This document shows, in pieces, positions 3,361 through 41,038 of a stretch of 64,000 bases of DNA (its first letter is position 1; the number at the start of each line of letters is the position of its first letter). Source of the stretch: Sphyrna mokarran. Taxonomy: Eukaryota. The translations under genes were made by a program, and so were the position numbers. The stretch is from positions 102,672,001 through 102,736,000 of the forward strand of contig JAGIQG010000009.1 in assembly GCA_024679065.1 (NCBI GenBank), read 5' to 3'. A model generated the notes under the pieces. The model worked only from the letters and a program-made list of their open reading frames with translations. It ran no database searches and was not told the origin of the DNA.

Positions 3361-3370
3361 AAAGTTTCAT

Positions 3371-10508: not shown

Positions 10509-10590
10509 ATGGTTGATGGAAAAGAAAATTTCCCCAACAGTGGAAACATATGCATTATTCTGATGTTTTGTATGCTTTTGTTGTCAAATT
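10509..10590 (+). CDS. Alternative candidate leader exon of gene A
   Basis: MVDGKENFPNSGNICIILMFCMLLLSN + T|gtaaga, phase 1; good acceptor tattctttag| at 10451; 573-bp intron to the IgV exon. Confidence 0.35.
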
Positions 10591-11163
10591 GTAAGATGCT
10601 ATTAGCACAAAGTGGAATCATATTCTGCAAAAAAACATTTTTAGAATTTATTTTATGGGATGTGAGCGTCCCTGGCTAGGCTAACATTTACTGCTGCCTT
10701 TTATGGACATCTGAGGCGGGGGGGTGGTTAAGTGGTATAACATGTTATATTCTACTAATTTGAGGACATGCCCATTATCTCTGTTACTTCTCACCTAACC
10801 AATTCTGTATCTGTTCACCCTCTTTCCCTGGGATTGGCTTTCCTCTTGGAAGGAATAGTTTCAGTCTCTTTCTGCCAGGTGAGAATGGGGGAAGGAGGGG
10901 TGGCGGTGTTAGGGGGATGATAGAGATGGTTTCTGATCCTGTGCAGCCCTTAACCTTACCCTGCTCACTGACTATTTGGTCCCTTACTGTGAGAAGGGGA
11001 GAGAGAGAGAGAGGGAGAGATGTGTCATCCCTTTGTCCTGAGGCACCTAAAGAAGTGGAATCACTGTTACACTATTTGTTGCTTTTTTATATATTTTCTA
11101 AAATTGATGTCAGGATTTTACTGGCACAGCTCAGAAGTTAACTTTCTGTTTTCTGTTTATCAG

Positions 11164-11469
11164 ATGGAAGGAAGAACGTGTTTGGTGCCACTGGTTCCTC
11201 GATGTTACTGGACCCTAAATATGGAGCAGACCTGAACAACAGTGAGGTTATCTGGGAGTTCACTGACAGTGATGGAAAATGTGTTCCTATTTTAGATTAT
11301 GTACCAGGTTACCCGCAAGAGGAACCAAACAAAAACTTTGAATCACGCTTACTATTTATTACATCCAATGGGTCTCTGATGTTGAACAATTTAGAACCCA
11401 GTGACCAAGGTGTTTATACTGTCACTATAGGCAGAGGCTGGAAATGGAGCATCATTTTGAAACTCTTAA
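11164..11469 (+). CDS. Gene A IgV exon (no B-F disulfide)
   Basis: tttatcag|AT...TTA A|gtaagt, phase 1-1, 306 bp; GRKNVFGATGSSMLLDP..IWEF..SRLLF..NGSLMLNNLEPSDQGVYTVTI; C-strand Trp and DxGxY present, canonical Cys absent; same length as paralogous exon 53722-54027. Confidence 0.92.
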
Positions 11470-14400
11470 GTAAGTGCTTTCAATGCTTTATCATTTTGGG
11501 AGTGACAAACATTTCAGGTTATGACTGTTCACTACTTTTCACTACACAATTAGAGAATAGGAACACAAACATTCCAGTCAACCCCTCAAGCCTGTTCTGT
11601 TATTCTATTAAATTCTGGTTGACCTGTCTCGCGCCTGAATTTATCTGTTTTTCTTAGTTAATCTCCTACATCTATTACCCAACAGAAAACAATCTGTTGA
11701 TCTCAGTACATGTAGGCCTCAACTTTACAGCGCTTAATGTGGCACTTATGATATTTATAAATTTGCACCCTGTTTCAGCTTCACAGCTGTGGCTCCCAGG
11801 TCCCAGGAATGACGAGCCTGTGGCTAACAATTGAGGGTTCTGAGTTTGTAACCCATGGAGTTTAGAAGGATGGAGAGGGGCGGGAGGGGTGGTGGGGGAG
11901 GGGTGTGTGGAGTGTGGAGGTGGGAGGATGGGGAAGGGGGTGGATTTCATTGAAACTGACAGAATGCTGAAAGACCTGGACAGAGTGGATGTGATGTTTC
12001 CATTAGCTGGAGAGAGTCAGATCCGAGGGCACAGCCTCAGAGTAAAGGGACAAGCCTTTAGAACCGAAATGAGGGGGGATTTCTTCAGCCAGAGGGTGGT
12101 GAATCCATGGAATTCATTTTCACAGAAGACTGTGAAGGCCAGGTTATTGAGTGTATATAAGACAGAGATAGATAGGTTCTTGACTGGTAAGGGATTCAAA
12201 GGTTATGGGGAAGGCGCAAGAGAGTATAGTTGAGAAAATTATTAGGAATGATTAAATGGTGGAGCAGACTTGATGGGCCACATAGCCTAATTCTGCCCTT
12301 ATATCTTATAGTCTCATTTTGTGGTCTTATGGTTCTAACCTTATGACTCTCTGCCTGTCTTTCTTGGGTATATCTGACCCCCGAATGATCCTGGAGGTGG
12401 AAAAACCCTCCTTTTGATTTTGTGGTCAAAATGTGGCCTGACAGTACAGAGACAGATAGGATGACAGGCAGAGGGAGCAATGGAGCTGAGAAAACAATGA
12501 TATCTGGGTTTTGTGCACCTAGTTTTAAAACACTGAGAGCACAGTCAATATACTATCATCACACTAGGCTCATCTCTTAGCATATCTGTACAGGGGAATC
12601 TCCAACAGTAAACTGCTGGCTGATAAATACCCTCAGACAAATAGCTCACCAGCACCTGGATTGCTAAGCAGATTCAAACTGCAAAAAAGCCTAAAGTTTT
12701 GCGTAGTAATGTGAGTTCAAAAAACAATCATTCATTTTTAACATTATACCTCTGGGAAAAATAGTTCTGATTCTGACAGATCAGGAAGCAATGTCTCCAT
12801 CCACGTTGGACTGGAAACCAACTAATGTAAAAGAAAATTTCCTGAACACATGTCAGAATAGGGTGCAGCAAGTTGGCACAGTGAATAGCACTGCTGCCTC
12901 GCAGCTTCAGGGACCCGGGTTCAATTCCCAGCTTGGGCCATTGTCTATGTGGAATTTGCACGTTCTCCCCGTGTCTGTGTGGGTTTCCTCTGGGTGCTCC
13001 AGTTTCCTCCCACAGTGCGAAATTCATGCTGGTTAGGTGCATTGGCCGTGCTAAATTCTCCCTCGGTGTATCTGAGCAGGCGCCGGAGTGTGATGACTAG
13101 GGATTTTCACATAAATTATTGCAGTGTTAATGTAAACCTACTTGCGACGCTAATAAATAAACTTCAAAGTTAAACTCTTCACCACTTTGCCTTTTACGCT
13201 GTTGTTATCTTAGTTTCCATTCAAGCCCCTGTTTTACACTAAATATTCTTTGCATTTCTGTAAATGTCTCCCTCTATCTCTGTGGTTGTATAATATACAT
13301 TCAGTGGTGTATTAGTACCTGTAATGTTTTTCAGTCTGACCTTAACCCTGGTGGGACACCCTCTCTCCTCCATTACTGCCAACTCTCCATCTTTTTCTCC
13401 TTTCTGGTCTTTGCTGTATCCCAGAGTATTTGCTACCTACTCTTGTCCCTTTTTGACCCAGGTCTGCATTGTCATCAGACAGATTCCCATTTGGCTAGCT
13501 ATGTCTGCACCAACCTATTTACACACTCTAGGCATTCACATAGCTGCAACTAAATATAGCATTCTATTTCCTCTTACTCTGACTCTGCTTTATTATTTCT
13601 TTCTTCAGTGTTATCTCTGTCTCTCCTAAATCTTTGAGCACCTCGGATTTCCTCTTTCATTTTAACTTTTAGTGCCCAATCCCTACTAAGTTATTTTACA
13701 CCCTTACCAATTCCTAATCAGCTGACAGCTCAGACTCCCATAGAAGGATTTATTGTGTTGATAACACAGCTAGGGAGGAGGTGAACAGTTATGATGATCA
13801 ACACTTTTATCTTTGATCTCTTTTGTCAATGGTTTTAATGTTTATTTATACAGGATAAGGTGTTGCTAAGGGATTATACGTTTGGCCATACAAAAATCTT
13901 GTTGGGCAACATTTTTAGAAGTGTTATGCCGAAGAACAATTTTTTTCAATTAAATTTATGATTGTTTCTGATTTGATTTATTATTGTCACACATATTAAT
14001 ATACAGTGAAAAGTATTGTTTCTTGCACGCTATGCAGACAAAGCATACTGTGCGTAGAGAAGGAAATGACAGAGCCCAGAAAGTAGTGTTACAATCATAG
14101 CTAGGGTGGAGAGAAAGATCAACTTAGTGTGAGGTAGGTCCATTCAAAAATCTAATGGCAGCAGGGAAGAAGTTGGTCTTGAGTCGCTTGGTCTGTGATC
14201 TCAGACTTTTGCATCTTTTTCCTCGACGGAAGAAGGTGGAAGACAGAATGTCCAAGGTTCATGGGGTCCTTGATTATGCTGGCTGCTTTGCTGAGGCAGC
14301 AGGAAGTGTGGACAGATTCAATAGATGGGAGGCTGGTTTGCCCGATGGATTGGACTACATTTTTCTCAAGATGGTGCCGGAGTGAGGCAACTTCTTGCAA

Positions 14401-17400: not shown

Positions 17401-20400
17401 TGTTCACAGTTTTAAAGTAATTAGATATGCACACATGTGCCATGAGACTAACAGTTGGAAGGTGATATTAGAATGGATAGTCCTCTGGCCAGCATGGAGA
17501 AGATGGTTGAATGGCTTTATTCTGTACACTATATTTATGTTTCTGTGGCAGAGAGGTGGAGCAGCAGAAGAATTAATGGAGGGAATTTTTTGCGTAACTG
17601 GCTGAAGGCACTAATGGTGGAGTGTAAGAGGTTGGAGAGGAGATGTTAGTTGTGGGGGCGGGGGGGACAGAACTGGGTGTCAGGAAAGGTTTGAAGGACA
17701 GAGGGAGTTTACAGAAATGGAGAGAGTCAAAAAAAATCATAAAAATCATTGAATCCCTGCAGTGCCATTTGGCCCATCAAGCCCCCCAGTCGAGCATCTT
17801 ATCCAGTCCCAACTCCCTATCCCTGTAACCCACACATTTGCCCCACTAATTCCCCCTAATCCACAAATCTTGGGACACTTAAAGGCAATTTAACATGGTC
17901 AACCTAATTAAGTAGTTGATGCGAAAACATTGAATGTATTCAAGAACAGGGAGATATAACACTTTGGGTGAATGAGACCAAAGGTTGGATTGAGTTGGAT
18001 GATCAGGCATGATTGTAGTGAATGGCGCAAAGGGCCAAATAGTCTCCTTCCACTCCTATCTTCTATATTTCTATGTTTCTCACCTGCACATCTTTGGACT
18101 GTGGGAGCACCAGGACAAAACCACACAGATATGGGGAAAATGTGCAAACTCCACACAGTGACCGAAGCCAGGAATCGAACCATTTAAACATTAGGCTGAG
18201 AGTTTTAAGCTCAAGATAATGAGGGTCAAGAGCAAATGCAAGTTGGTGAGGACAGGGTTGACATGTGACTAAGAGATGGTACAGAATAGAAAGTAAACTG
18301 CAAAGTTTCAGATGAGATGAAGGATGGGGTCTTCAGAAGCGGCAAACTGAGCATTAGAATAGCGGAGTCTGGGTATGAGAAAGATGATGGATGAGAATTC
18401 CAGCAGTAGTTAAGGGGAGACAATAGTGGTATTATCACTTGACTATTAATTCTGGGGACCAGGGTTCAAATCCTGCAGCAGCAAATGGTGAAATTTGAAT
18501 TGAATTAAAAAAAAATCTGGAATTAAGAATCTACTGATGATCATGAAGCATTTTCGATTATCAGAAAAACCCACCTAGTTCGCTAATCCCCGTCAGAGAG
18601 GAAATCTGCTCTCCTTACCTGGTCTGACCTACGTGTGATTCCAGAGTCTGAGGCTGAATCGGATCTGTCCTTAGGCAACTAGGGATGGGCAATAAATCTG
18701 ACTAACCAGTGGCACCCATGTCCGACCAATGAATAAAAAAAGCCAGGGTGATGTAGGAGCAGGGTCGGATAATCTTGGAGTTGGACAGCCCTTGTGATCA
18801 TATGAAGGCTTTTTAAGTTCACCTCAGCGTTGATGTGATAATGACGTATGTACCTGTGAAGGACATAGTTCTTATTAGTTGATTATATCAACGTAACGGG
18901 CAGGCTTTTACACACCTCCTGTCATGTTTCGCAGAGGCAGCCCACCATTAGCTTCCAGTCCCACCTTCCAGTCCCACCAGGGTTTCCAGTTCTACGCATC
19001 CCTCCCACCGCTGGGAAATCTGCAACAGGGGTTCGTCGTTCGGTGGGACTGGAAGACCCCACTGGTGAGGACGTTTGGAAAATTCAGTGAGCGGCAATGA
19101 CATTCTCGTGTTCAGACCTGTTAATCTGACCATTTTCCCTCTCCCCACAGAGCCACTGTCAGAGCCTTTCATCAATGTTACCTACGTGTATACCACCATC
19201 AACCTGACCTGTCTGGTATCTGCGGGGAAAGTGAGTTCCACTCAATGGCAGAAGAATAAGAAAATGATCACGAATACTGAACGCTATCGGTTGGTGCAAA
19301 ACAACAGCATGTTGATTATTTCACATGTTACATTATCAGACTGCGGAATCTACACTTGCACCATGGAGAATCCTGTTAGCCAGAAGAACGTTTCCTATCC
19401 TCTTGCAATTTACAGTGAGTCTTGTCTGTCAATCTATTCCATTTATTAGTCAAAAAGGATACAGTACCTAATATTCCTTACACCCTGCCTCACTAAAGAT
19501 GTTAATATTGGAAGAACTTTGTACATTTTCATGATAGCTAAAGGGGGGGAATAAAGATGGAAAATCACAAGTTTGTTTACCCGTATATTTCTAACCATTT
19601 ACCGGGAATGCCAAAGCGGAAAAACCATGTGTGAAAGTTTGCTGTACTGCCGGCCATGGGAATTGCAGTGGGGGGGGTATGGGGGTACGGGGGGTGGGGG
19701 GTGGGGTATCCATGCAGAGATCCGTTGGCTTCGGGTGAGATTTTCCAGTTTTGGGGTGAGCACGGCCAGAAAATCCCACCCCGTATTTCAATTTCACATT
19801 CCAGTGCAGACGGGTCACGCAATCGAGGAACTTGAACATTGGTGCGATATGATACATTCACCTCATCGTGGAGTTGAAGGAAAGCACAGTGGCACGGTGG
19901 TTAGCACTGCTGCCTCACCCTCTAGGGACCGAGTTAAATTTCGGCCTTGGGTGACTGTCTGTGCGGAGTTTTCCCCGGGTCTGCATGGGTTTCCTGCTCC
20001 TCTCATCCTCCAAAGATGTGTGAGTTAGGTAGGTCGGCCATGCTAAATTGCTCCGTAGTATTTGAGGGAATTAGCAGAGGAAATACGGGGATAGAGACTA
20101 TGCGATTGTTGTTGGTGTAGGATCGGTGGACTGAATGGCCTCAGTCTGCACTGTTGGATTCTATGATACGTTGTCGGCAATGAGAGTACTTTCGGCTGTG
20201 TTTAAGTAGATGGAAAGTCACCTTGAAGAGCTGGGGATGGACCCTGAAAGTTGCATTGGAGTCTATGGGGAGATGTTGTATCTCCAAAACTCAAGACCCT
20301 TGATAACTAAAGTGATAAGGAAGAGGAAACCTCAGCTTATAAACCCCTTTCAAAATAGCATAAGTTTAAACTACGTTCTTTATTTCAGGTTTGCATTTTT

Positions 20401-23400
20401 ATGCATCACCATTATCTATCACTGCACTGATAACTGTTGCTGTTGCCTTAATCTTGAAGATCATTTCCTTCTTGAAGGCCAGCTCAAGTAAGACAGATTT
20501 GCTTTTTGCAGAATTTGATGTTGAAACTTTAAAAATGTTACAATTTATTGATGGAGACTCTGTGAAAAATGTAAATATGATGCCTGTGTCATGTCACGTG
20601 CTCCTTTATATCATAGGATCCCTTCAGAAGGAGGTCATTCAGCCCATCAAGCTAGCAGTGACAACAAGCCCACCCAAGCCCTATCTCCGTAACCCCACAC
20701 ATTAACCCTGGGTAATTCATTTCATAGAATCTCAGAATTCTTCCAGTGCAGAAGGCTCCCATTGAGCCTGCACTGACAAACCCTGCTAAGGCACTATTCC
20801 CATAACACAACTTTTTTTTTAGAAAAAAATGGCCTCCTCCTACAGTGCAGGAGGAGGCCATTGGGCCCATTGAGTCTGCACCAACCACAATTCCAGCCTA
20901 ACTGTGTTGCCCACCATAACCCCATGTATTTACCCTGCTAATCCCCCTGACACAATGGGGCAATTTTAGCATGGCCAATTAACCTAACCCGCACATCTTT
21001 TGTAGTGTGGGAGGAAACCAGAGCACCCAGAGGAAACCCACACAGATACAGGGAGAAGTGCAGATTTCACACAGGCACTCACCCAAGGCTGGAATTGAAC
21101 TCAGTCCCTGGAACTGTGAGGCAGCAGTCCTAACCACTGTACCAGCTGAATATATAAATATTCTTGATTCAAATGATGTTAATACAAATTTTCTTATTAT
21201 TCCAGGCTGCAAGTTATTAGAAAATCTACTACAAATTGTGCAGTGTTTGTCTCTCATTGCCATCTCTGGATATTGGATATGGATAGGAGGTACTGGATGC
21301 TCTCCTGTTTCCTTATTTGCGGTTACTAATTATACTTCTACAACACACTAACTGCGTTCCAACGCAGTAAATACCAGTTTAATATGTTACAGACTGAGAA
21401 CTTGGATGAGCTCCAATCTTACCTTGCCAAACGATGAATTTAACCTCAATCAGTTGATTTGTGGACTGGAATCAAATTTTTTTTTGCAAAAGGTCCATTA
21501 AGTTTGGAAATTCTTTCAGAATTCCTTATGGTTCTAAAGAAATTGGAATCAACCGAATAATTTCCACTCATTCTCAATCTTGTGACCCCAGCAATTCCTG
21601 CAGAAATCTATCTATTTTTGACAATCTTCCCACATAAACACTCGTTGGCCCATTCTCCAAGCTTTGTAAAACTATCTCTGATGTTCATCAGCAAAGGGCA
21701 TAGAAACTAGCAGCACAATTAGCCATTCAGCCCTTCAATCCTACTCCACCATTAATTTTGATCATCAACTTAAATATCCGGCTCTCTCCGCCCCCCCCAT
21801 ATCCCTTGGCCTCTTTAGGCCCAAGAGCTATTTCTAAATTCTTCTTGCAATCACAAATGTTTTGGCCTCAACTACATTTTGTGTGGTAGTGAATTCCACT
21901 TATTCACCACGCTCTGGGTGAAGAAATTTCTCCTCACCTCAGTCCTAAAAGGTTTATCCGTTATCCTCAAACTATGATCCCCTACATCTGGATTCCCCCA
22001 CCATCAGGAACATTCTCTCTGAAATCTATCCTGTCTAGCCCTGTTAGAGCTTTATTGGTTTGTATGAGATCCCCTTTCATAGAAATTTATAAATTCCTAA
22101 CAGGATTAGACAGGGAGAATTCGGAAAGAATGATCCTATCTACTCCTACCAGCTCTGCCAGTCTGGCCATGCATGTTTCTGCTAGACCCATTTTAAATAT
22201 TTTCCGCAATTTTAATCCTTCTGCACTCATATTCAAATTGAGCCTTGAGGAATTGAACACTTCTTAAATGTGGAGAGTTCACACGTAACCCCATGTAATT
22301 GTGGCTTCATGACCTGTAGGGTTACAACCTCACTCCATATTAATGTACAGAATTCGATTGTTCATCAGTTATGTTGATCTGTCTCCATCTCACTGCGATC
22401 TGCTCTGGTCCTCACTGCTGGCCCCAAGCTTAGGAATTCTTGCAAGTGTTCCCCTAATTCCATTTCTGTGGCAGAGTAACCTGATTCCCACAGAGAATTG
22501 ACACAAACATCAATGTTCGAAGATGTTTTGCATTTACAAAGGCTCAAGAGAGAGGGGATGGGAGCATTGATCATGGAATCATATGGAATCCCTACAGTGC
22601 AGAAAGAGGCCATTCAATCCATCAAGCCTGCACCGATAAACAACCCTGTCCCCTTAACTCCACATATTTATCATGGATGGCATGATAGCACAATAGGGAG
22701 GCACAGTGGCATAGTAGTTATCACTGCTGCCTTACAGCACCAGGACCTGGGTTCAACTCCCATCTTGGGCTGTTGTCTGTGCAGAGTCTGCATATTCTCC
22801 CTGTGTCTGCATATCCTCCCCATGTTTGCATGGGTTTTCTCCGGGTACTCTGGTTTCCTTCCGCAGTCTGAAAGCCATGCTAGTTAGGTGCATTGGCCAT
22901 GCTAAATTCTCCCTCAGTGTACTGAGACAGGTGCTGGAGTGTGGTGACAAGAGGATTTTCACAGTAACTTAATTGCAGTATTAACGAAGCCTATTTGTGA
23001 CACTAATAGGTAAACTTTTTAAAAAACTTAAAAGTTTAATCCAACTTAGCATATCCAATCCTCCTAACCTGCACATCTTTGGACTGTAGGAGGAAAGCGA
23101 AGCATCTTGAGGAAACACACATGCAGACATGGGGAGAAAATACAAACTCCATACAGACACGCACCCAAGCCAGGAATTGAACCTGAGTCCCAGGAACTGT
23201 GATGCCCCAATGCTGGTTGTGACTGGATCAGCAATCCTGTGGGCTGGGATAATTTTCTGGTGATATAAATTCAAACTTCAGCTGGCATATTTAAATTTAG
23301 AAACTCGACAAATGAGGAGTAAGAAGTCAGACTTTGAAATGATGAACACGAGCTGATAGATAGTGTTGTAAAAACCCATCCAATTTATTTGGAAAGGAAA

Positions 23401-26400
23401 CCTTCCAGCCTTACCCAGTCTGGCTTACATATATCTCACAGACTAACAGAGAAAGGTGATTGACTCTTAATTGCTGTGAGAAATGGCTTAGCAAGCTACT
23501 TATTTCACCTGTTGATAATGGTGAAGCCATGGTTCACTATCACTTTCTCAATGGTAATTAGAATGGTAAGGCAAGCACTTATTGCCCAATGAAGCCTCCA
23601 TCTCCTGAATGAATGAATAAAAAATATTAATCCTTTACCATAATTGGCTTTGTCGTGTTAGTGTCCCCACATTGGTGTTTAGTTGAAATTGGGTGATATA
23701 AGATTGCGTTTTTAATCTTGCCTAAAAACCAGGTCTGAAATGCACCCATTTTCTTGCTCTTTCGGCACTTAGAATTTATTTCTTAAGATTGTGTCCCCTC
23801 TCTTTAATCATTGAATTCAGAAAGCTGAATTCGTACAATCCCATCCGAGACCAAAGGAGAATTCCATTCTCAGAGCTGCCAGTAAACTTCTGGCCAATAT
23901 GTTAAAAATTACTATTTGACATAGAGCAATTTTTATTTCACTCAGCTTTTCTCATCATTATAATCTTAAACTCTGATATAATTCTTGTGAAATACCTTTG
24001 CAACTTCACGTGCACCTTTATCATTTTTATAACTGGAGAAGTGAACAGTATTTGTTAAGTGTGGCATAATCAATGTTTGATAAGTTTCCCATAACATCTT
24101 GGTTGTTCAATTTTAACCCTCTGTAAATGGATCTCAGTTCAATTTTATTAACCTGCATCACTAGTTTTGATGATTTTTGTATACACGAAAATGTATAGTT
24201 TCTCCTGTATCCATTTATTTTCCAAACTTCCTTTCCATTCTGCGACTTGTTCCCTGATTTCAAATTATTTGAGTGTTGTTAAAGGCCGTATGAAAATCCA
24301 AATATTTCATCTCCTACCAACCCTAAGCAATACATGAAAGTCACTACCTCCCATTCTTTTCATGCCTCACATTCTTGAGAGGCGCGGTGGTAATGAATTT
24401 GCAAATGGCAGATATTCTCTCATCTACAAAATTATGTAATTTTATTTATCTTTTGCTTTTTTAATAGGACCTGACAAAAAAATGGTGTTCGTATTGGTGT
24501 TCTTCTGTCTCTTGGCAATACCATCCGTATTTTTGACTTGTAACAGATTAATCATGACTCTGAATGCCACTTGTAAGTTTCAAGATGTTTTTATATCCAG
24601 TATGCAAAAAGCTGATGGTCAATGGTGAGGGGAGGATTGGTGAGATTTGGATCCTATGTGTTAGTCCTCTTGGGTATCAACAATCTAAAGGCACTCAGTC
24701 GACTCCTAACACAAACAACGCTGAACATCATGCATCCAATGCAAGGTCTTTAATTATACAAGGAGAACTCTCCACCAACACTAGATAGCGGAGCAGTTCT
24801 TAGGTTATAGAGAAATAGCTCAGCAGTTACAAATCAGTAACGAGAGAATTTTCACATCTTTCATTTGAAATACATATCCCCCACTGATATCATAGGCCTT
24901 TTGCGCTTTCTTATCCAATAGAAAACTAACCCTTTATTAGCATAATATGTCCCCATTTCTTGCTATTTGGAAATCACCATGATAACTTGTTTCTTTTTCA
25001 TCCTACTATCATGCAGTGTTTATGGAAGAAGGTTTTAGACACACTCACTTATCCTGTTTACATCAGCGTTGGTCTTATTGAAGGCATAACTAAAGGCTGT
25101 GTTTGGCTAATAATCATTTTCCGTTACTGAACAGAGTATTTTTTTGACAATTACGGAACTTTAATTTTCACAGTTGCTGTAACCTAACTTCCACATATGT
25201 TGGCACAAATTTTTGTGCTCTCTAATTGCATGTCATTCCTTCCCAGCTCGCTTTCTGATGTTAATGGACACAGTAGCTGCAACAGGTGAATTCAGTGTGT
25301 TTTGTACATCAGTGTTCCTGTTTGTGAAACCAAAGCTTCAAGCTGGTGAGTGGTCAGTGATAAAATAGGAGCCAGCAAACTAATTCTGAATGTTACATCG
25401 GATCAGGAATTGTCTGATTAGGATTGTGTCATTTTTGCTACATTGTACATTGGAAACTTTTAAACAATTGATGATTCTAGTGCATTTGACCCATTGTGTC
25501 TGTGCTACTTCAGTTTAATCACTCTACTCTGCTGTCTCCTCACACCCTGACTGAGCATTCTGCCTCAAATACTTGTCCAAATTTCCTTCAATATATACAA
25601 TGGTTCCCAGTTCAACAGCTCCCTGTGGGAAAACATTCTATCCTCATGGAATTAATGAATCCCTACAGTACAGAAGGAGGCCATTTGGCCTCTCAAGTCC
25701 AGACTGACAACAATCCCATCCAAGCCCTATTCCTGTAACCTGATAATATTTACCCTGCTACTCCCCCTTACACTGGGGTCAATTTAGCATGGCCACTCAA
25801 TCTAACCCGAACATCTTTGATCTGTGGGAGGAAACGGTGACACAATGGTTAGCACTGCTGCCTCATAGTTCCAGGGATTTGTGTTCGATTCCCGGCTTGG
25901 GGGGTCACTGTCTGTGTGGAGTTTGCACATTCTACCTGCGTCTGCGTTTGAATTTCCATGGGGTGCTCCCACAGTCTGAAAGGAGTGCAGGTTAGATTGA
26001 TTGGCCATGTTAAATTGCCCATTGGTGTCCTGGGATGTGTGGGTTAGATGGATTAGCGGGGTAAATATGCAGGGTTTCAGAGATAAGGTCTGGGTGTGAT
26101 TGTCGTTGGTGCAGGGTCAATGGGCCGAATGGCTGCCTTCTGCACTGTAGTGTTTCTATGATTCTAAACCAGAAGAATGGCACCCAGAGTAAACACATGC
26201 ATTCGTAGACGCGGGGAGACAAACACAGATAGTGACCCAAGGCCAGAACAGAACCCAGGTCCCTGGTGTTGTAAGTCAGCAATGCTAACCACTGTGTCAC
26301 TGTGCCACCACAACCACTTGTGGAAATAAATTTCTCCTAAACTGCCTTTTTAATTCGAGTGGCAAAAATGAATATTTTGAATTACGTTGAGAATACAGTA

Positions 26401-29400: not shown

Positions 29401-32400
29401 ACTTGGAAGTTGTTATTTTCTAGTTTAAGCTTAAGTTTATTTATTAGTGTCACAAATAGGCATACATCAACACTACCCTGTGAAAATCCCCGAGTTGCCT
29501 CAATCTGGTGCCTGTTTGGGTACGCTGAGGGAGGATTTAGCCCAGCCAATGCAACTACCCAGCATATCTTTAGAGTGTGGGAGGAATCTGGAGCACCCGG
29601 AGGAAACCCATACAGACACGGATAGAACGTGCAGATTCCGTACAGACAGTAGCAAGTCGAATCCGGATCCCTGGTGCTGTGGGCAGCAGTGCTAACCATT
29701 GTGCTGCCATGCCACCTTGGTTCGAATACAACCAATGGGTGCGATCTTATCACTCATTCATGCCATGCTCCAGCTGCGAGGGAGATGGATAATTTGGCGA
29801 CAAGCCAAATCTCTGTTCACTGCAGTGGGATTGGGGAATCCCGCTGGCAAGAATAATTGGAAGATTCCAGACTCTGGTTTAAGCAAATGTATTCCTGACA
29901 GAGTTATTACTACTTCGGCACCAGATTAATAGAGCATGTTCTGATGCAGTGCATTTTGGACAATGAATTCTATTCATGTAACGTATAATTATATTTTATT
30001 AAATACCAACCCTGCTATTATATATCAACCTTTTTGAATGAACTGTGTTGTGTTATATCATGTCTTATCTCAGTTTTAACTATATTATGATAAGCATTAA
30101 GTTGTGTGCTAATTGGAACTGCACTTTGTAAATTTATATGATGTTATCTATTGCAGGTAATGAATGTGAACCAGTCGACAATCTACAAACAAATCTAATT
30201 TTTACTGCAGTGGTGCCATTCATTTTAGTTTTTATTCTTTTTGCTAGTTGCATCATGTGTAAGTAATGTTGATGTGGTTACAGATTGTATCAAAACTATT
30301 GTAATGCATGCAAAGGACTTTGATTGAGTGAGATTTTCTACTTCACTCACTCTCCACTACAACAGCAGTGTATATTATACCATATTTGCTAACTCATATC
30401 ACTTTGTGTACAATGGCTACCAATACATGTGACAACAATAAATTAAATCAAATCTCTGCCAACCAGCAACCTGGCCTTGGTCCCCAACTGAACTTCATGA
30501 TCCCTGTTGAACTTTGGACTTCTCTCCATGCCACTCACCATCCCCCTCTCCCCCCTGCCTTCTCTCCTGCCACCCCCACCACCCAATTCCCATTCTATTC
30601 TCATTCTGTCTTTTCCAGTCTTATTTTGCTCCTCACTCCCCCCCCTTAATCTGTTGTACTTGATTTCGTTTCCACTTGAAGAATTCGTCTGTCAAACATG
30701 GTACACCCATTTTCTTGTTTTGACATCTCTATCTCCTTCATCACCCATGGATGATGACGTGACGTTCACACCTTGTCAGAACGTCCTTACCCTGTTCATC
30801 TCAAACACCTCTTCCTAAAGATCACCCCTTGTTCCATTGCAATGTTTCCTATCTGTTCTTGGTTCCATTCTACCCTGTCTAGTTCCAATCCCATCACATT
30901 GAAGTTCCAATTTGGAAATATTTTATTCAATTGCTCTTTGCTCTTCTCCATTACTAAACCAGACCTAATGATATGAAAGCCTTTTAAAAGTCTTTTTTAC
31001 TCCATTCTTAAAGTTCCAAATCCTATGCTCAGAGTGGACCTGGTATTCCAAAATCCATTCCTTTCTTGCTCCAAAAACCAAATTCCAATTCCAATTGAAT
31101 CCGACTCACGATGTCCAAAAGAGAGGAAAACAAGATCCAAGCTGATGAGATAAGGCACTGCACCCCTTCTTGGCTTGATCTGATGCTTGATCTAGCCAAA
31201 AGGCCAAGAAGCCTGAAGATATGGTATCATACGATATGAAAGGCTTATAATGTGAAAGGCAAGAACCTTATAATATAGTCATTCTTACCCAACTGTTCCC
31301 ACAAAGGCACTTAGGGAGGAATTTTCACCTCCCATCTGTCAAGGGAAACCTACGCAGACACAGGGAGAATATGCAAACTCCACACAGACTGCCACCCAAG
31401 GTTGGAATTGAACCTGTGTCCTTGGCATTGTGAGACAGCGTGCTAACTATTGTGCCACACTGGTTGCTGACCCTAAGACCAAAGCACGATATCCTCAAGC
31501 ATGGAAATGATGCTCATCTCTTAACAGTTTTTGTGAAATTAATTGGCTACTTTAGCTGAGGGATTGAAATAACTAGGCTAATAAATATAATGGAGTAAGA
31601 GAATTTCATATGACCTGTTCAGCTGGGTGGCGCAGTGGCACAGTGGTTGGCATATTGCCATATAACGCCAGGGACCCAGATTCAACTCCTGGCTTGGGTC
31701 ACAGTTTTTGCGGAGTTTACACATTCTGACTGAGTCTGCGTGGGCTTTCTCCGCGTGCTCCAGTTTCCTTCCACAGTCTGAATGATGTGCTGGTTAGGTA
31801 GATTGGCCGCTCTAAATTCTCCCTCAGTGCACCCCAATAAGCGATGGAGTGTGGCGACTAGGGGATTTTCACAGTAACTTCATGCCTACTCATGACAGTA
31901 ATAAATAAAACGTTAAAAATAACTTAAAACATAGTCATACTATATGGCAAAAATTAAAAGACAACTTGTTTTGTGTTTGAAAGAATTTATGGGCTGTTAT
32001 TTTAATAATCTTTTCTTTGAAAAACCTTTGCTCAGTTCATTCTGTCATTGACACAACTCGTCATATTTGTATGTTCACCACCAACAGATAGAAAATGGAA
32101 GACACGGAGAACTCAAACCCTAACTCCAAACCCAACTGTCAAAGAGGCGGATGAACGTGAATGTACTGTAAGTATTGGTTTAAATGCAGGTGGCAAGTTA
32201 GAAATGCATCTGGGTGTCTGAAACTTTGGTAAATGGACACTTCCCATGTTATTATAGTCCAGAGATGAAATTATGCTTTCATTTTGCTGTTAAAATGTAA
32301 TTTGTAAGGAAATATGGATGTGTTCCTGTATTGAGCAAAATGCATACCAATAGTGCTAGCTGCAGGCAGTACACCTCAGGAATTATTTTTCCTAAATTGT

Positions 32401-35400
32401 GCCCTGTTTAACATTCAACCGGGCAATTAAAATAGTCTGTCACCTTGGTACAGTAAAGAAGCTAAATGGTATGTTGGCCTTTATAGCAAGAGAATTTGAG
32501 TACAGGAATAGGGATGTCTTGTTGCAATTATATAGGGCGTTGATGAGGCCACACTTGGAGTATTATGTACAGGTTTGGTGTCCTTATATGGTGGAGGATC
32601 CCTTAGCTTTAGAAGGAATACAACAAAAGTTTACCAGGCTGATTCCCGGGATGGCAGATCTGTCATATGAAGAGAGACTTAGTCAGTTAGGATTATATTC
32701 ATTGGATTTTAGGAGAGTGAGAGGGAATCTTATGGAAGTTTATAAAATTCTAATTGGATTAGACAGAGTAGATTCAGAAAGAATGTTTCTGAATGGTGGG
32801 AGAGTCCAGAACTAGGGATCATCGTTTGAGGATAAGGGGCACACCTTTTAGGGCTGAGGTGAGAAGAAATTTCTTCACCAGAGGGTGGTGAATCTATAGA
32901 ATTCACTACCACAGAAAGTAGTCGAGGCTGAAAGTTTCGAAAAGAAATTAGATGTAGCTCTTGGGGCTAAAGGGATCAAGGGATATGGGGGAAATAGGAG
33001 AACAGGATATTGAATTTGATGATCAGCCATGCTCAAAGTGAATGGCGGCAGAGCAGGTTGAAGAGCAGAATGCGATTAAATTAATAGCCTAGTGTTTGAT
33101 ACCAATTAAAATTTTATCACCAATTTTCCCTTATCTAATTGCAAAAAGTGCAATTGTAAATTAGGTGCAAAATTGAGAGAAAGGGTAAATACTGAAAGTG
33201 CTGCATTTATACAGAGGATTTATATTGCAATATTAAACACTGTGTATTGCTGCATAGCCCATAATAAAAATATTTAATGTTAATGCTAGACTGCATTAAA
33301 ATTTGAATGATAAAATGCTGGGGCAGCACAGTGGCACAGGGGTTAGCACTACTGCCTCACAATGCCAGGGACACAGGTTCAACTCCTGTCTCGGGTCACT
33401 ATCTGTATGAAGTCTGCACATTCTCCCCGTGTCTGCGCGGGTTTCCTCCGGATGCTCGATTTCCTCCCACAGTTGCAATGATGTGCATATTAGGTTGATT
33501 GGCAATGCTGAATTGACCCTAGTATCAAGGAATTAGCAGGGTAAATGTGTGGGATTATGGGGATGAGGCCTGGATGGGATTGTGGTTGGCGCAGACTTGA
33601 TGGGCTGAATGGCCTCCATCTGCACAGAAGGGATTCTATGTTTATGTCTGAGGAAAATCGATAAGTTTAATATATTATCATCCATAACCCCTACATCCTT
33701 CCAAATAATTTTTACACTAATACAAGATAAATGGAGCAAACAGCCAATGTAAATTTTTAATTTTATAAACACTCCCTAATTTCCTTTTAAACACCTCTGC
33801 CCTAATATCATCGATACTTCTTTAACACTGGAAATGTTCAGGTGTTACAATAAGGACCTGATTATTTAAGATATAAGGTTCCATACCAAATCTCGTTTGA
33901 ATTTTTTTGTGTAGAGTTTACTCAACAGTGAGAGTATATCAGTGGCTACTTCATCTGTGCTGATAAAATGGTTCATACGTTATCACTATTTTTTTTAAAG
34001 ACTTTAACGTTTTGTTGTCCCCAAATCTAAATAAATAGAACTTTCATATTCCTTAACTTTTATTCTTTACTACTAGAGAATCCAGGGGAGGCGATGGTAT
34101 GGTGGCGATGTCGCTGAACTAGCAATTTGGCGATCCAGAATAATGCCCAGGGTCCCAATTTCAATAGGGATCTGGAATCTGGTTCACTAAAGTCATTTAG
34201 GGAAAGAAATCTGCCATCCTTGCCTTGTCTGATCTCCATGTGACCCTAGATCCATAGGAATGGCCTAGCCACCCGGTTCAAGAGCAATGTTTTTCTTCAT
34301 TCATTGGACATGGGCATTATTGGCTGGTCAATTTTCTTTGTCCATCACTAGTTGCCCTTGAACTGAGTGGCTCTGCTAAGCTATTTCAGAGAGCAGTTAA
34401 AGAGTCAACCACATTGCTGTGGTTATGGAGTCACATGTATACATGTTTTCCATTTCAGTTATTCCTGTAGTAGTTACCCAAATCCTGCCATCTGTTACAG
34501 CTATTATATTCCTTTAGTTTGTTATACTTCAAATGGCAAATTGCAAATCATGTTGCAGCAACATAAAAGCTTAGTTAGGCTGCAGTTAGGGTATTTGCAT
34601 GCACTTCTGTTTGCAACAGTACCAAAAGGACATGGATGCTTTGGAGAGAGTGCGAAGAAGGTTCACCAGGATATTACCTGGTCTCGAGACCCATACCCAC
34701 ATCCCATGAACTAAGAGATAAATAGTGGTTCACCAGGAGGATCTTCAAGCCAGGGATTAAACAGGCATTTATAATTAAGATTTAGTTACAAGAAATTAAC
34801 ATATACTAATCAAATATGTACATTTACACAAAAGCTATATTAAAATATCCAATCACAACTGTCAGTTACACCATGCATAACGTAAGGGTATAATTGGCTA
34901 ATTAGAATTTGTGCACATCTATTGAATTGTAATATCACCAAGCATGTATTTCTTTCTACACAGTTGTGAAGTTCTCTTTCTAACCAGCTGTTCATCGACC
35001 TCCCTGTCCCATTGTCTCTTGTTAGAACAGATGCTAGAAGTTGTCAATGTGCATAATTGTGTGTAGTATTATGGCTCTTGATCCTCATATACATCTGCTT
35101 TAGTCAAGACCTGTGGTTTTCTCAGTCTAGGATCTTGCGGTTTATGTGATTTTTAAACTAGTATGATTGTTAACCCTTTCACCATGCTCGTATAGAAAGT
35201 GCCATCGGAAAGGGAATGGGTGTCAAAGGTGACTGAGAAGTGGACTATGTTTTGGAGGGAGCATTTCCTTCAGAATTCTGAATAGGGAGGGCAAAGAAAG
35301 ATCTGTTTACTGGTGGCACCACACTCTGGAGATCACAGAAATGGAAGAGGCTGGTGGGGTGGAAGCTGAGGGCAAGGATATCATATCATGCTTCTGGGAG

Positions 35401-37027
35401 CGAGGAGAAAAAGTGAGACAGAAGTGCAGAAAATAGATTGAACACATAAAGGACCCTGTCAATTATGTTGAGAGGAATCTCGGTTGAGAACAAGTAAGAC
35501 AGATCATAGAAGAAGGCCATTCAGCCCATTAAGTCTGCACTAACAACAATTCCACCCAGGTCCTATCATCATAACCCAATGCATTTACCCTACTAATTTC
35601 CCTGACTCTAACAGACAATTGACCAGGTCAATCCATCTAACTTGTACGTCTTTGGAGCGCAGAAGGAAAACAGAGCACCCACATGAAACCCACACAGACA
35701 TGGGAAGAGACCAGAAGACCGAGACATTAACAGGTTTCAGACTTTTGAACGGACCTACCTCCACATTTAGTTGACCTTTCTCTATACCCTAGCTAAGACT
35801 GCAACATTGCATTCTGCACTCTCTCATTTCTTTCTATATGAATGGTATGCTTATCTGTATAGCGGACGAAAAACAATATTTTTTATTGTATGTTAATACA
35901 TGTGACAATAATCAAATCAAATCAACTCAGGTGTGACAGAGATGGAGAAACTAAGAGAATGGAATAGATTCCTGACAGGAACCTGGGTGTGAGCATAAAT
36001 CGTCAAAGTAGCTGTGAAAATCCATGGGCTTGTGAATGTTAGCTCATAGCCTATCTCCAGAAACAGATGTAGAGAAGCCAAGGAAAGAAAGGGATGGGTT
36101 ACTGATGGGTAACGTGAAGGTGAGACAAAAGTGTAAATTGGGGAAAATAAAGCCAATGAACTCTTCCAGTTCAAGGTGAGAGCAGCGAGAGACATTGGTA
36201 TATTTATCAGTGCACCAGAGAAGGAGGTGAGGAAAGGAGGCCTGAGTAGGACTGCAACAAGGAATGTCCCACCTATCCTTGGCAGGCACGGTTCAGACCC
36301 ATGCAAGTATCCGCACCTTGGAGGAAGTGCATGGATTGGAATGAGAAGTAATTGATGTGAGAATAAGCCCAACCAGGTGGAATAGGGTGATGGCAGTTGG
36401 GGACTGGTTGGTTCTCTAGTCAAAGAAGAAAAGTAGATCTGGTGGGCAGTGGAGGATTAATGAGATTGAATATTTGTAGTGAAAAGAATCATATAGTGCA
36501 AAAGGAGACCATTCATCCCATCAAGTCTGCACCAACCACAGTCTGATTGCAGCCCCATCCCCGTAACCCCAAGCATTTACCGCAGCCTGTCCCTTGACAC
36601 TAAGGGGCAATTTAGCATGGCCAATTCACCTAACCCGCACACCGTTTGGATTGTGGGAGCAAACCGGAGCACCTGGAGAAAACCCATGCAGATGCAATGA
36701 GAATGTGCAAACTCCACACAGCAATGACCCAAGTCAGGAATTGAACTTGGATCCCTGTGTTATGAGGCAGCAGCACTAACCACTGTGCCACACTGCTGCT
36801 CAGAAGAGTAAGGCTCCGAAAAATGGAGATTGTTGAAGCAACAAGGTGAGAGCGTCGGGATAGGAAGGCATCTGTTCACCATGTAGAAACTCACTGCAGC
36901 AATAGGTTTTCTGGGTCTCTTTTATTCAGCTGTTTCTGACACCTTTTTCTCTTTTGTTCCGTAGGAGCTGGTGGTGAAGAGTTGCTCTGAATCTGGTACT
37001 ACTGTTCCTGGTGCAGAAATTGCTTAA
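11164..37027 (+). CDS. Gene A: spliced IgV-IgC2-5TM membrane protein (HEPACAM/CD2-like ectodomain, CD47-like multi-pass domain); 9 coding exons plus an uncertain leader
   Basis: Exons 11164-11469, 19151-19414, 20389-20487, 21206-21289, 24468-24572, 25247-25345, 30157-30258, 32088-32167, 36965-37027 all have AG/GT boundaries with matching phases and join into one stop-free frame (1202 nt incl. TAA; about 415-427 aa depending on leader). Confidence 0.8.
12862..13170 (+). mobile_element. V-SINE subfamily with an alternative 3' tail
   Basis: Same head and core, but tail ..ttctccctc..ggcgccggagtgtg..gcagtgttaatgtaa..aataaataaac; also 22697-23020, 29430-29712 (-), 31625-31910, 38968-39242 (-), 39503-39800, 46242-46522 (-), 49425-49705, 57682-57968. 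Confidence 0.88.
13968..14360 (-). mobile_element. Rex1/Babar LINE 3' fragment
   Basis: KAASIIKDP..HSVFHLLPS, AATAAATCAAATC tail; related copies near 14780-14930, 35740-35920 (+), 51540-51770. Confidence 0.8.
15286..15640 (+). mobile_element. SacSINE1/DeuSINE-type SINE
   Basis: gtcactgga..ggttcaaatccca..agatggtgaaatttgaatt..gggaaggaaatct..gggatgggcaa; other copies 2716-2910, 18413-18740, 23360-23620, 34085-34290, 44925-45265 (-), 59208-59545, 62855-63185 (-). Family name assigned from memory. Confidence 0.75.
15724..15999. mobile_element. Penelope pLTR-derived inverted-repeat insert
   Basis: Arms approx. 15767-15866 and 15884-15999; decayed TSD caggtgtgatg / cagatgttatg. Confidence 0.8.
15910..15947 (+). 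ncRNA. Minimal hammerhead ribozyme motif with one core mutation
   Basis: CTCAT-CTGATGA-A-GGGG-TAAA-CCCC-GAAG-GC-TA-GTGGG; GAAA mutated to GAAG. Confidence 0.5.
16400..17160 (-). mobile_element. CR1 3' fragment
   Basis: KKAFGTLAF..LQLYKTLVRPHLE followed by CR1 3' UTR. Confidence 0.9.
19151..19414 (+). CDS. Gene A IgC2/I-set exon
   Basis: ccccacag|AG...TAC A|gtgagt, phase 1-1, 264 bp; PLSEP..INLTC..QWQK..NSMLII..SDCGIYTCTMENPVS; canonical C-W-C plus an extra Cys in DCG. Confidence 0.93.
20389..20487 (+). CDS. Gene A TM1 exon
   Basis: tatttcag|GT...TCA A|gtaaga, 99 bp; SLHFYASPLSITALITVAVALILKIISFLKASS. Confidence 0.85.
21206..21289 (+). CDS. Gene A TM2 exon
   Basis: ttattccag|GC...GGA G|gtactg, 84 bp; SCKLLENLLQIVQCLSLIAISGYWIWIG; the donor is weaker than the others. 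Confidence 0.72.
24468..24572 (+). CDS. Gene A TM3 exon
   Basis: gcttttttaatag|GA...ACT T|gtaagt, 105 bp; GPDKKMVFVLVFFCLLAIPSVFLTCNRLIMTLNAT. Confidence 0.8.
25247..25345 (+). CDS. Gene A TM4 exon
   Basis: ttccttcccag|CT...GCT G|gtgagt, 99 bp; SRFLMLMDTVAATGEFSVFCTSVFLFVKPKLQA. Confidence 0.78.
26590..28860 (+). mobile_element. Degenerate CR1 ORF2, interrupted by a younger CR1
   Basis: NYRPVSLTSVVGK, DVVYMDFSKAFDKVSH, HLEYSVQFWSP; the sequence resumes near 28531 after the nested insert. Confidence 0.92.
27881..28520 (-). mobile_element. Younger CR1 3' fragment, same subfamily as 1-1349
   Basis: 172-aa ORF very similar to 505-1257; TAGAACA tail repeats. Confidence 0.95.
30157..30258 (+). 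CDS. Gene A extracellular loop + TM5 exon
   Basis: tctattgcag|GT...ATG T|gtaagt, 102 bp; GNECEPVDNLQTNLIFTAVVPFILVFILFASCIM. Confidence 0.82.
31186..31212 (-). pseudogene. U2 snRNA 5' fragment
   Basis: Reverse complement GCTTCTTGGCCTTTTGGCTAGATCAAG versus U2 GCTTCTCGGCCTTTTGGCTAAGATCAAG (1 substitution, 1 deletion). Confidence 0.7.
32088..32167 (+). CDS. Gene A cytoplasmic exon 1
   Basis: caccaacag|AT...ACT|gtaagt, phase 1-0, 80 bp; YRKWKTRRTQTLTPNPTVKEADERECT; basic stop-transfer cluster directly after TM5. Confidence 0.72.
32448..33070 (+). mobile_element. CR1 3' fragment
   Basis: LQLYRALMRPHLEYYVQVWCP..LSYEERL. Confidence 0.9.
35180..36900 (-). mobile_element. Old Penelope-like RT remnant interrupted by SINEs and a Rex tail
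   Basis: PHLLLWCTD..ELEEFIGF..LTFTLPISNPSLSFLGFSTSVSGDRL resembles the PLE RT region (RYIDD..LTFT..LPFLD). Confidence 0.7.
36965..37027 (+). CDS. Gene A terminal coding exon
   Basis: Long pyrimidine tract ...cttttgttccgtag|GAG, phase 0; ELVVKSCSESGTTVPGAEIA-TAA; AATAAA at 38876 and 38952 downstream. Confidence 0.6.
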   Translation, partial: ELVVKSCSESGTTVPGAEIA

Positions 37028-41000: not shown

Positions 41001-41038
41001 AGGTCATCTGCTCAACCTCAAAGACTAAGGAAATAAGT

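What the first reader, a model, noticed from the sequence alone, without database searches (positions are those of the whole stretch)
11164..37027. Hidden gene for an IgV-IgC2 protein with a five-pass membrane domain: a CD47-like architecture on a HEPACAM/CD2-type ectodomain
Seen: after two Ig exons come five 84-105 bp exons, all phase 1-1 with canonical splice sites, each holding one hydrophobic segment, then YRKWKTRR and a short tail; the joined frame has no stop. These short exons are not evident from the ORF track. Known: CD2/SLAM/CEACAM/HEPACAM proteins are single-pass or GPI-anchored, whereas CD47 (and poxviral homologues) is the classic vertebrate Ig protein with five TM segments, encoded by a run of short exons, but with only one IgV. 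Inference: this is either a divergent multi-Ig branch of the CD47 family or an independent exon-shuffled fusion, possibly an undescribed shark receptor/ligand family. Sequence homology to CD47 could not be shown by eye.
Basis: partly seen in the sequence, partly recalled or inferred. Interest (0 to 1): 0.9.

Follow-up and report, generated by a model that had tools for sequence, protein, structure and literature searches.

The report
Shark CD2-like protein with five-helix anchor
This is a real gene for a two-immunoglobulin-domain cell-surface protein that crosses the membrane five times, one of a large shark-and-ray gene family that databases list only as uncharacterised and whose layout otherwise recalls only the 'self marker' CD47.

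Summary
On the + strand lie an IgV exon, an IgC2 exon and five exons of 99, 84, 105, 99 and 102 bp. All are phase 1-1 with canonical splice sites, and each carries one hydrophobic segment. Then come Y|RKWKTRR across a splice junction, a short tail and a TAA at 37025-37027. Every exon matches, in order, a 465-aa RefSeq protein of Mustelus asterias at 68-84% identity. Eight chance AG..GT hydrophobic frames from the same introns gave no family hit.

The gene belongs to a multigene family found here only in sharks and rays. RefSeq models exist under names such as 'uncharacterized' or 'HEPACAM-like'. By fold the ectodomain is CD2/CD58/CD48-type.

An extra IgC2 cysteine co-varies with a cysteine in the TM4-TM5 loop, as in the CD47 interdomain disulfide. 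Homology of the five-helix body to CD47 could not be shown by Pfam, a profile search or fold search.

First-reader notes report the same architecture at neighbouring loci of this genome (s1-887374, s1-887746).

The parts
11164..11469 (+). IgV exon (phase 1-1), CD2-type V domain without the canonical B-F disulfide; one Cys only
   Evidence: Pfam V-set E 2.5e-9; 84% identical to P0159 residues 30-130; splice sites; Cys count
19151..19414 (+). IgC2 (I-set/C2) exon, phase 1-1, with the canonical Cys pair plus one extra Cys
   Evidence: Pfam I-set 1.2e-12, Ig_3 3.6e-12; 82% identical to P0159 132-218; sequence
19342..19344 (+). Codon of the extra IgC2 cysteine (S-D-C-G), proposed partner of the loop cysteine
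   Evidence: Co-occurrence with the loop Cys across 50 family proteins
20389..20487 (+). Membrane exon 1 (99 bp, phase 1-1): linker and helix 1
   Evidence: 81% identical to P0159 220-251, E 9e-12; splice sites
21206..21289 (+). Membrane exon 2 (84 bp, phase 1-1): helix 2, ending in the conserved W-I-W-I-G
   Evidence: 69% identical to P0159 263-288, E 1e-9; 72% to P0160/P0010; tblastn; sequence
24468..24572 (+). Membrane exon 3 (105 bp, phase 1-1): helix 3 and a basic inner loop
   Evidence: 70% identical to P0159 291-323, E 6e-11; splice sites
25247..25345 (+). Membrane exon 4 (99 bp, phase 1-1): helix 4
   Evidence: 71% identical to P0159 327-357, E 5e-10; splice sites
30157..30258 (+). Membrane exon 5 (102 bp, phase 1-1): outer loop N-E-C-E-P and helix 5; homologous to the only anchor exon of single-pass paralogs
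   Evidence: 82% identical to P0159 359-391, E 6e-14; single-pass P0186/P0187/P0192 anchors hit this region of five-pass members
30165..30167 (+). Codon of the cysteine in the loop between helices 4 and 5
   Evidence: Cys at this column in 43 of 53 family rows; covariation
32088..32167 (+). Cytoplasmic exon: completes Y, then RKWKTRR and an acidic stretch; ends in phase 0
   Evidence: 68% identical to P0159 393-417, E 2e-8; sequence; frame
36965..37027 (+). Last coding exon, 20 codons and TAA
   Evidence: tblastn to P0159 429-465; sequence and translation

Best explanation
The stretch is an intact member of a multigene family found here only in elasmobranchs. The proteins have a CD2/CD58/CD48-type ectodomain: an IgV without the usual disulfide, then an IgC2. 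They are anchored by five membrane helices, N-terminus outside and C-terminus inside, with one helix per phase-1 exon.

Shown:
- the exon structure;
- conservation of all exons in an annotated ortholog;
- the five helices in an AlphaFold model of that ortholog;
- a charge pattern that obeys the positive-inside rule;
- homology of helix 5 and its stalk to the ordinary anchor of single-pass paralogs.

Inferred: the membrane-proximal IgC2 is stapled by a disulfide to the loop between helices 4 and 5. This would fix the ectodomain on the bundle, as the C15-C245 bond does in CD47.

Inferred more weakly: the protein acts as a cell-cell recognition ligand or co-receptor. It would bind other CD2-like proteins in trans through its IgV face and signal through lateral partners of the helix bundle rather than through its own tail. 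The tail is short and carries no ITSM, and 46 of 49 family tails also lack an ITIM-like motif.

It works like CD47 in layout, but membership in the CD47 family is not shown.
For: Exons, phases and splice sites.

Colinear match of all nine exons to P0159 (Mustelus asterias, 465 aa).

Family spread: 187 proteins at E<=0.001 to the IgV exon. Of 107 examined, 62 had 350-520 aa and at least 4 hydrophobic segments. Of 215 fetched proteins, 99 match a profile of the membrane part (23 of these built it). All 30 of the 30 proteins looked up by name that belong to the family are sharks or rays; names agree.

AlphaFold model of P0159: helices 220-249, 257-289, 293-319, 325-356, 367-400, with block pLDDT about 67-89.

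Net charge of loops over 49-53 rows: +1.2, -1.0, +2.7, -0.2, and tail +2.1.

Ectodomain fold: CD58 1ccz Z 14.8 rmsd 3.5 over 163; CD48 2ptv Z 14.6 rmsd 1.7 over 94; CD2 1hnf Z 13.5 rmsd 3.1 over 166.

Cysteines: both present in 40, both absent in 7, loop only in 3, IgC2 only in 0 of 50 rows.

Tails: 0 of 49 with an ITSM-like motif, 3 of 49 with an ITIM-like motif.

CD47 facts: PMC8410850 (passages and section 10); PMC10902115 (passages).
Against: There is no RNA evidence for this copy.

The signal-peptide exon was not found.

The spliced product of this window was never folded or searched as a whole, so topology rests on the ortholog and on per-exon hydropathy.

The cysteine covariation is not significant once relatedness is allowed for: 5 independent pairs, 3-4 going the same way, none opposite, sign test about 0.125.

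RefSeq also lists in-frame isoforms lacking exon 1 or exon 2 of the membrane part, which would upset the topology if real.

The function is entirely inferred; no ligand or expression data were seen.
Confidence: 0.78

Rival explanations
1. The family is a true, very divergent relative of CD47, either a co-ortholog or a sister lineage. The five-helix body and the Ig-to-loop disulfide would be inherited from a common ancestor, and CD47 would have kept one Ig domain.
For: Several features agree with CD47:
- the same topology, with one helix per exon;
- an Ig-to-loop-4/5 cysteine pair, against C15-C245 in CD47 (PMC8410850);
- a glycine conserved in 45 of 53 rows at the helix 2-3 turn, against the conserved G191 at the top of helix III in CD47;
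- short tails without tyrosine motifs.

CD47 keeps only 17 of 305 residues between human and the bird/reptile clade, so a blank by sequence is expected.

Sub-threshold PF08204 hits fall on the IgC2 of 4 of 10 members.

An untested first-reader note places a receptor gene next to BBX on another piece of this genome.
Against: PF04549 was not hit in 10 full proteins at E<=0.1. It was also not among the 25 families listed for the 23 membrane parts at E<=10.

The profile of the membrane part found no CD47 chain at E<=10.

No CD47 or poxviral CD47-like protein appeared in any of the six fold searches that could show the membrane part.

The Ig-side cysteine sits in the E-F turn of a C2 domain, not near the N-terminus of a V domain.

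The ectodomain is CD2-type.

The cysteine-bearing stalk and helix 5 are shared with single-pass CD2-like paralogs.
Confidence: 0.25
2. The main product is an ordinary single-pass CD2-like protein, with IgC2 spliced straight to exon 5. The four extra membrane exons would then be minor, alternative or annotation-driven inclusions.
For: All exons are phase 1-1, so skipping keeps the frame. Single-pass paralogs with a homologous anchor exist. RefSeq lists exon-skipped isoforms in several genes. P0029 (single-pass model) is the close sister of P0189 (five-pass model) in two Scyliorhinus species.
Against: The four extra exons are open, have good splice sites, and are 69-81% identical to the ortholog. 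Homologs exist in both sharks and rays, which implies long purifying selection on the coded helices. The loop and IgC2 cysteines co-vary, which makes sense only if the bundle is made.
Confidence: 0.1
3. This particular copy is a recently silenced or unexpressed duplicate within the cluster.
For: No first exon was found. The reading frame stops 25 codons earlier than in the Mustelus model, while the sequence after the stop is still similar. No RNA run could be laid.
Against: Nine exons have no frameshift or internal stop and all splice sites are intact. Signal exons are short and diverge too fast for this search.
Confidence: 0.07

Closest known systems
CD47 (integrin-associated protein) and poxviral CD47-like proteins
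   Same: An Ig ectodomain sits directly on five membrane helices, N-terminus out and C-terminus in. A cysteine in the loop between helices 4 and 5 is apparently paired with the membrane-proximal Ig domain. The tail is short, variable and free of tyrosine motifs. The membrane part is coded by a run of short exons.
   Different: There are two Ig domains, and both are of CD2 type. No sequence, profile or fold match to the CD47 membrane domain was found. The Ig-side cysteine is at a different place. The linker lacks the S-W-F motif. This is a large, fast-evolving multigene family rather than a single gene.
CD2 family: CD2, CD58, CD48, 2B4/CD244, NTB-A and other SLAM receptors
   Same: It has an IgV without the canonical disulfide followed by a C2-type domain. 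These proteins give the best structural matches to the ectodomain. The genes lie in tandem clusters. Single-pass paralogs have a homologous anchor.
   Different: Four extra membrane helices lie between IgC2 and the anchor. There is no ITSM in the tail. Sequence hits to the Pfam 2B4 and SLAM models are weak only.
HEPACAM / HEPACAM2 (the label RefSeq gives many members)
   Same: An IgV-IgC2 ectodomain.
   Different: HEPACAM is single-pass with a long cytoplasmic domain (established knowledge, recalled). The label comes from automatic naming and is not backed by any test made here.

Membership tests
CD2/SLAM family | N-terminal V-set domain lacking the B-F intradomain disulfide | tested here: met
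   V-set E 2.5e-9. The exon has a single Cys, which is not at the B or F strand positions.
CD2/SLAM family | Membrane-proximal C2-type Ig domain | tested here: met
   I-set 1.2e-12, Ig_3 3.6e-12, C2-set 0.047.
CD2/SLAM family | Two-domain fold closest to CD2/CD58/CD48/2B4 | tested here: met
   On the ortholog model: 1ccz Z 14.8, 2ptv Z 14.6, 2dru Z 14.4, 2ptt Z 13.9, 1hnf Z 13.5. Many unrelated Ig pairs score within 1-2 Z, so this ranking is soft.
CD2/SLAM family | Single membrane span or GPI anchor | tested here: not met
   Five helices.
CD2/SLAM family | ITSM (T-x-Y-x-x-V/I) in the tail of SLAM receptors | tested here: not met
   0 of 49 family tails have it. The window's tail exons hold no Tyr beyond the split-codon Y.
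CD47 | Five membrane helices after the Ig domain, N-terminus out and C-terminus in | tested here: met
   AlphaFold helices on the ortholog; loop charges; one hydrophobic segment per exon.
CD47 | Single IgV ectodomain | tested here: not met
   Two Ig exons.
CD47 | Sequence match to the CD47 membrane-region model (PF04549; accession recalled) | tested here: not met
   No hit in 10 members at E<=0.1. It is not among the 25 families listed of 92 matched at E<=10 for the 23 membrane parts, so at most one member could match, and only weakly.
CD47 | Disulfide between the Ig domain and the loop between helices 4 and 5 | tested here: inconclusive
   Co-occurrence of 40/7/3/0 in 50 rows, Fisher 1.2e-6 on rows. 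With relatedness allowed for there are only 5 independent pairs, sign test about 0.125. No chemistry was done.
CD47 | S-W-F linker loop and G-L-G at the top of helix III | tested here: not met
   The linker reads L-H-F-Y-A-S-P in the window and carries no S-W-F. A conserved G (45 of 53) exists at the helix 2-3 turn, but within W-I-x-x-E-G. The CD47 motifs are from PMC8410850.
CD47 | Same helix-bundle fold as the solved CD47 structure | tested here: inconclusive
   No CD47 chain appeared. The membrane-only model is poor (pLDDT 63.5, pTM 0.37), the full model's lists are filled by Ig domains, and I could not confirm that the CD47 chain was among those compared.
CD47 | Position next to BBX/IFT57 | not testable with these tools
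Only an unchecked first-reader note exists.
HEPACAM | Single-pass with a long cytoplasmic domain | tested here: not met
   Five helices and a tail of about 47 residues.

The most novel reading that the evidence does not exclude
Sharks and rays keep the ancestral form from which CD47 arose: a CD2-family two-Ig protein on a five-helix body with an Ig-to-loop disulfide. The family would then be the long-missing relative of CD47, whose membrane domain is described as a unique fold with no known kin. It would also tie CD47 to the CD2/SLAM lineage.
Probability: 0.25. Interest if true: 0.85.

Novelty: new variant of a known kind. Interest (0 to 1): 0.62.

Why it matters
[quoted passage not shown] This family is a second, large group of Ig proteins with the same layout and apparently the same interdomain staple, but with a CD2-type head.

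If the two are related, the family gives CD47 an evolutionary origin and a set of natural variants for asking what the five-helix body does. If they are not related, it is a case of convergence, and it suggests that stapling an Ig domain to a helix bundle solves a general problem of how a recognition domain is presented.

Either way, the family is a candidate recognition system of cartilaginous fish that current annotation hides under misleading names.

Tried and rejected
An exon candidate of my own, 25039-25122 (weak splice sites), had 0 hits in 197 family proteins. It was replaced by 21206-21289, which homolog tblastn revealed.

The signal-peptide exon was sought by local alignment to the ortholog's first 28 residues and by a scan for ATG, a hydrophobic stretch and a phase-1 donor. 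Only weak candidates came up (for example 4986-5088), and none was adopted.

Family exons upstream (1-11163) and between the two genes (37100-48000): none at E<0.02.

Membrane exons of the tandem paralog: none at E<0.05. There is only a weak helix-2-like match at 59765-59845 (E 0.14) and an exon-like frame at 59620-59715.

Wider search with the membrane part: the profile search was swamped by hydrophobic words and gave 4 hits. The single-protein region search gave 2 hits among 953 candidates. The Atlas gave no usable hit. None of these says anything about absence.

Fold of the membrane part: the membrane-only model is poor. Its best matches are helical hairpins (Z up to 8.8) and the first five helices of class B/C/adhesion GPCRs (Z up to 8.7, rmsd 5.5-9). 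Both lie within the tool's stated noise range for helical bundles.

Ninjurin-2 (E 0.12) and scattered Pfam hits such as MARVEL, EXS and TMEM154, each in one or two members, are taken as chance.

Literature: six searches found no paper on a two-Ig five-pass family in cartilaginous fish. The library holds open-access papers only. The supplementary alignments of PMC8410850, which I did not open, may show how far down the vertebrates its CD47 set reached.

The spliced product of this window was not joined for any search, fold, topology predictor or printout. The whole-protein analyses used the natural RefSeq ortholog instead.
Full report
WHAT IS THERE. Pfam gives V-set E 2.5e-9 for the first and I-set E 1.2e-12 for the second.

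After them come five short exons: 20389-20487 (99 bp), 21206-21289 (84), 24468-24572 (105), 25247-25345 (99) and 30157-30258 (102). All begin after a pyrimidine-rich AG and end before GT. All are phase 1-1 and open, and each holds one hydrophobic stretch.

The last base of exon 5 and the first two bases of the next exon (32088-32167) form TAT, so the protein reads Y-RKWKTRR. A final exon, 36965-37027, ends in TAA.

IS IT MORE THAN CHANCE? Splice-like hydrophobic frames are common here. My first scan of 19.4-38 kb listed nine such loci, of which three are real exons. I myself first picked a false one, 25039-25122.

The decisive evidence is homology. I searched the IgV exon alone against 1.84 billion representative proteins. 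That gave 187 hits at E<=0.001. The better ones are proteins of about 390-470 residues with four to six hydrophobic segments after residue 220.

One of them is P0159 (Mustelus asterias, 'uncharacterized protein LOC144497662', 465 aa; name). It matches every exon of the window in order:
- IgV 84%
- IgC2 82%
- membrane exons 81, 69, 70, 71 and 82%
- tail exon 68%
- last exon 70% over 43 alignment columns, gaps included

As negative controls I took eight chance frames from the same introns. They gave one hit, E 0.12, to a non-family protein among 215. The false candidate gave none among 197.

I never joined the exons into one protein for a search, a fold or a printout. Whole-protein work was done on natural RefSeq proteins instead.

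THE FAMILY. Look-ups by name show a large family. The sharks are Scyliorhinus canicula and S. torazame, Mustelus, Carcharodon, Cetorhinus, Heterodontus, Hemiscyllium, Chiloscyllium (two species), Stegostoma, Rhincodon, Heptranchias and Pristiophorus. The rays are Pristis, Hypanus, Hemitrygon, Mobula and Amblyraja.

Within a species, the members whose contig was shown lie on one contig of chromosome size. The names are automatic and inconsistent: uncharacterized, HEPACAM-like, CD48-like, CD276 homolog, CEACAM-like, SLAMF9-like, VEGFR2-like.

Among the ten more distant IgV hits that I looked up, the non-elasmobranch ones were a loach, a bird and a coelacanth protein. None of these matched the profile of the membrane part. 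A local profile of that part matched 99 of the 215 proteins fetched (23 of the 99 built the profile).

So the gene is not hidden in general, because RefSeq models it. Six literature searches, however, found no description of the family (open-access library only).

STRUCTURE AND TOPOLOGY. An AlphaFold model of P0159 built with 53 family sequences has mean pLDDT 75.1. It shows two beta domains and five helices: 220-249, 257-289, 293-319, 325-356 and 367-400, with block pLDDT mostly 67-89.

Over the family, the net charge runs as follows:
- +1.2 for the loop after helix 1
- -1.0 for the loop after helix 2
- +2.7 for the loop after helix 3
- -0.2 for the loop after helix 4
- +2.1 for the first 20 tail residues

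This is the positive-inside pattern expected for N-terminus out and C-terminus in.

The ectodomain's best low-rmsd structural matches are CD58 (1ccz, Z 14.8, rmsd 3.5, 163 aligned), CD48 (2ptv, Z 14.6, rmsd 1.7, 94; 2dru, Z 14.4), 2B4 (2ptt, Z 13.9), CD2 (1hnf, Z 13.5, rmsd 3.1) and NTB-A (2if7, Z 13.4). Many other Ig pairs score within 1-2 Z.

The IgV exon has no cysteine at the usual B and F positions, as in the CD2 family (established knowledge).

THE CYSTEINE PAIR. The IgC2 exon has one cysteine beyond the canonical pair (S-D-C-G, codon 19342-19344). Exon 5 has one in the outer loop before helix 5 (N-E-C-E-P, codon 30165-30167).

In the 50 family rows that have both sites, both cysteines are present in 40, both are absent in 7, only the loop cysteine is present in 3, and only the IgC2 cysteine in 0. 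Fisher's test on rows gives 1.2e-6, but the rows are related. On a tree there are 5 independent contrasts. The partner goes the same way in 3-4 of them and never the other way, giving a sign test of about 0.125.

I read this as good but unproven support for an interdomain disulfide. CD47 has exactly such a bond, C15-C245 (Cys33-Cys263 in precursor numbering), between its Ig domain and the loop between helices 4 and 5. That bond is needed for ligand binding and signalling (PMC8410850 passages; PMC10902115 passages). A first-reader note on the same stretch (s1-886462) proposed this tether.

ORIGIN OF THE FIVE HELICES. Four short relatives have a single span: P0186 Cetorhinus 'CD2-like', P0187 Carcharodon, P0192 Mustelus 'CD48-like' and P0030 S. 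torazame. Their stalk and helix (G-x-E-C-x-P...) match the exon-5 region of five-pass members. They are orthologs of each other rather than isoforms of five-pass genes.

Helix 5 is therefore the family's ordinary type-I anchor. The other four helices form two hairpins, which together leave the topology unchanged, and they lie between IgC2 and that anchor.

In a quick tree of the Ig region (63 rows, none dropped), the single-pass groups are nested among five-pass groups in both sharks and rays. The backbone support is only 84-87 and the root is at the midpoint. The simplest reading is that the five-pass state predates the shark-ray split and that single-pass forms arose by loss or skipping. The opposite direction is not excluded.

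RELATION TO CD47. What it works like and what it belongs to are separate questions.

The layout is CD47-like: an Ig domain on five helices, a probable staple, a glycine conserved in 45 of 53 rows at the helix 2-3 turn, and short tails without an ITSM (0 of 49) and almost without ITIM-like motifs (3 of 49).

Membership failed or could not be decided:
- The CD47 membrane-region Pfam model was not hit in ten members at E<=0.1. It was also not among the 25 families listed for the 23 membrane parts at E<=10.
- The CD47 V-set model gave only sub-threshold hits (13-19 bits against a cut-off of 21) in 4 of 10 members, and these fell on the IgC2.
- A profile of the membrane part found no CD47 chain among PDB sequences.
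- Foldseek and VIA-align returned no CD47 or poxviral CD47-like protein.

These blanks are weak evidence. The membrane-only model was poor. The full model's hit lists were filled by Ig domains. The CD47 paper itself reports that its membrane domain resembles nothing else, and that only 17 of 305 residues are shared between human and the bird/reptile clade. I put the odds of true homology at about one in four.

WHAT COULD NOT BE DONE.
I worked beside that stretch afterwards.
- The only run found (X1, guessed RNA, contigs) holds 0.11 of the sampled words of 19151-25345. That is close to the 651 of 6195 bases that are exonic, but it could equally reflect repeats.

VERDICT. The gene is a real, apparently intact member of an elasmobranch family that joins a CD2-type two-Ig head to a five-helix, probably disulfide-stapled body. 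The family is annotated but uncharacterised. It is CD47-like in design, but its kinship to CD47 is open. I rate it a new variant of a known kind, with interest 0.62.

Noticed in passing
window 48082-55774 (+): A tandem paralog with an extra N-terminal IgV (48082-48435, 58% identical to a Chiloscyllium protein), then an IgV at 53724-54026 (51% to this gene) and an IgC2 at 55517-55774 (60%). Its membrane exons were not found in the remaining 8 kb of the window.
   Followed up: partly
window 59620-59715 and 59765-59845 (+): An exon-like open frame that ends C-I-M before gtaagt, like exon 5, with local DNA similarity to the 3' end of exon 5. Next to it is a weak helix-2-like match (E 0.14). These may be diverged membrane exons of the paralog.
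   Followed up: partly
window 37028-37102 (+): The frame stops at TAA, but the next 25 codons are still about 70% like the C-terminus of the Mustelus model, with a 6-codon insertion that holds the stop. This is either a recent truncation here or a different 3' end.
   Followed up: no
window 20488-20540 (+): The Mustelus model uses a donor 11 codons further on in membrane exon 1. The window's read-through is open and similar there, but it has no GT in the right phase.
   Followed up: no
family proteins P0010, P0009, P0011, P0194 and P0166, P0168, P0170: These are RefSeq isoforms that skip membrane exon 1 or exon 2 in frame. With four helices the tail would end up outside. Whether they are real or artefacts is unknown.
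   Followed up: no
window 26500-28600, 32399-32815, 11889-12233, 16907-17161 (both strands): Open frames in the introns share a repeated retrotransposon-like protein motif (reverse-transcriptase tail). This was seen only in the ORF list.
   Followed up: no
AlphaFold model of the membrane part of P0159: The best whole-bundle alignments were to the first five helices of class C, B and adhesion GPCRs (Z up to 8.7, rmsd 5.5-9). That lies within the tool's stated noise range for helical bundles.
   Followed up: no
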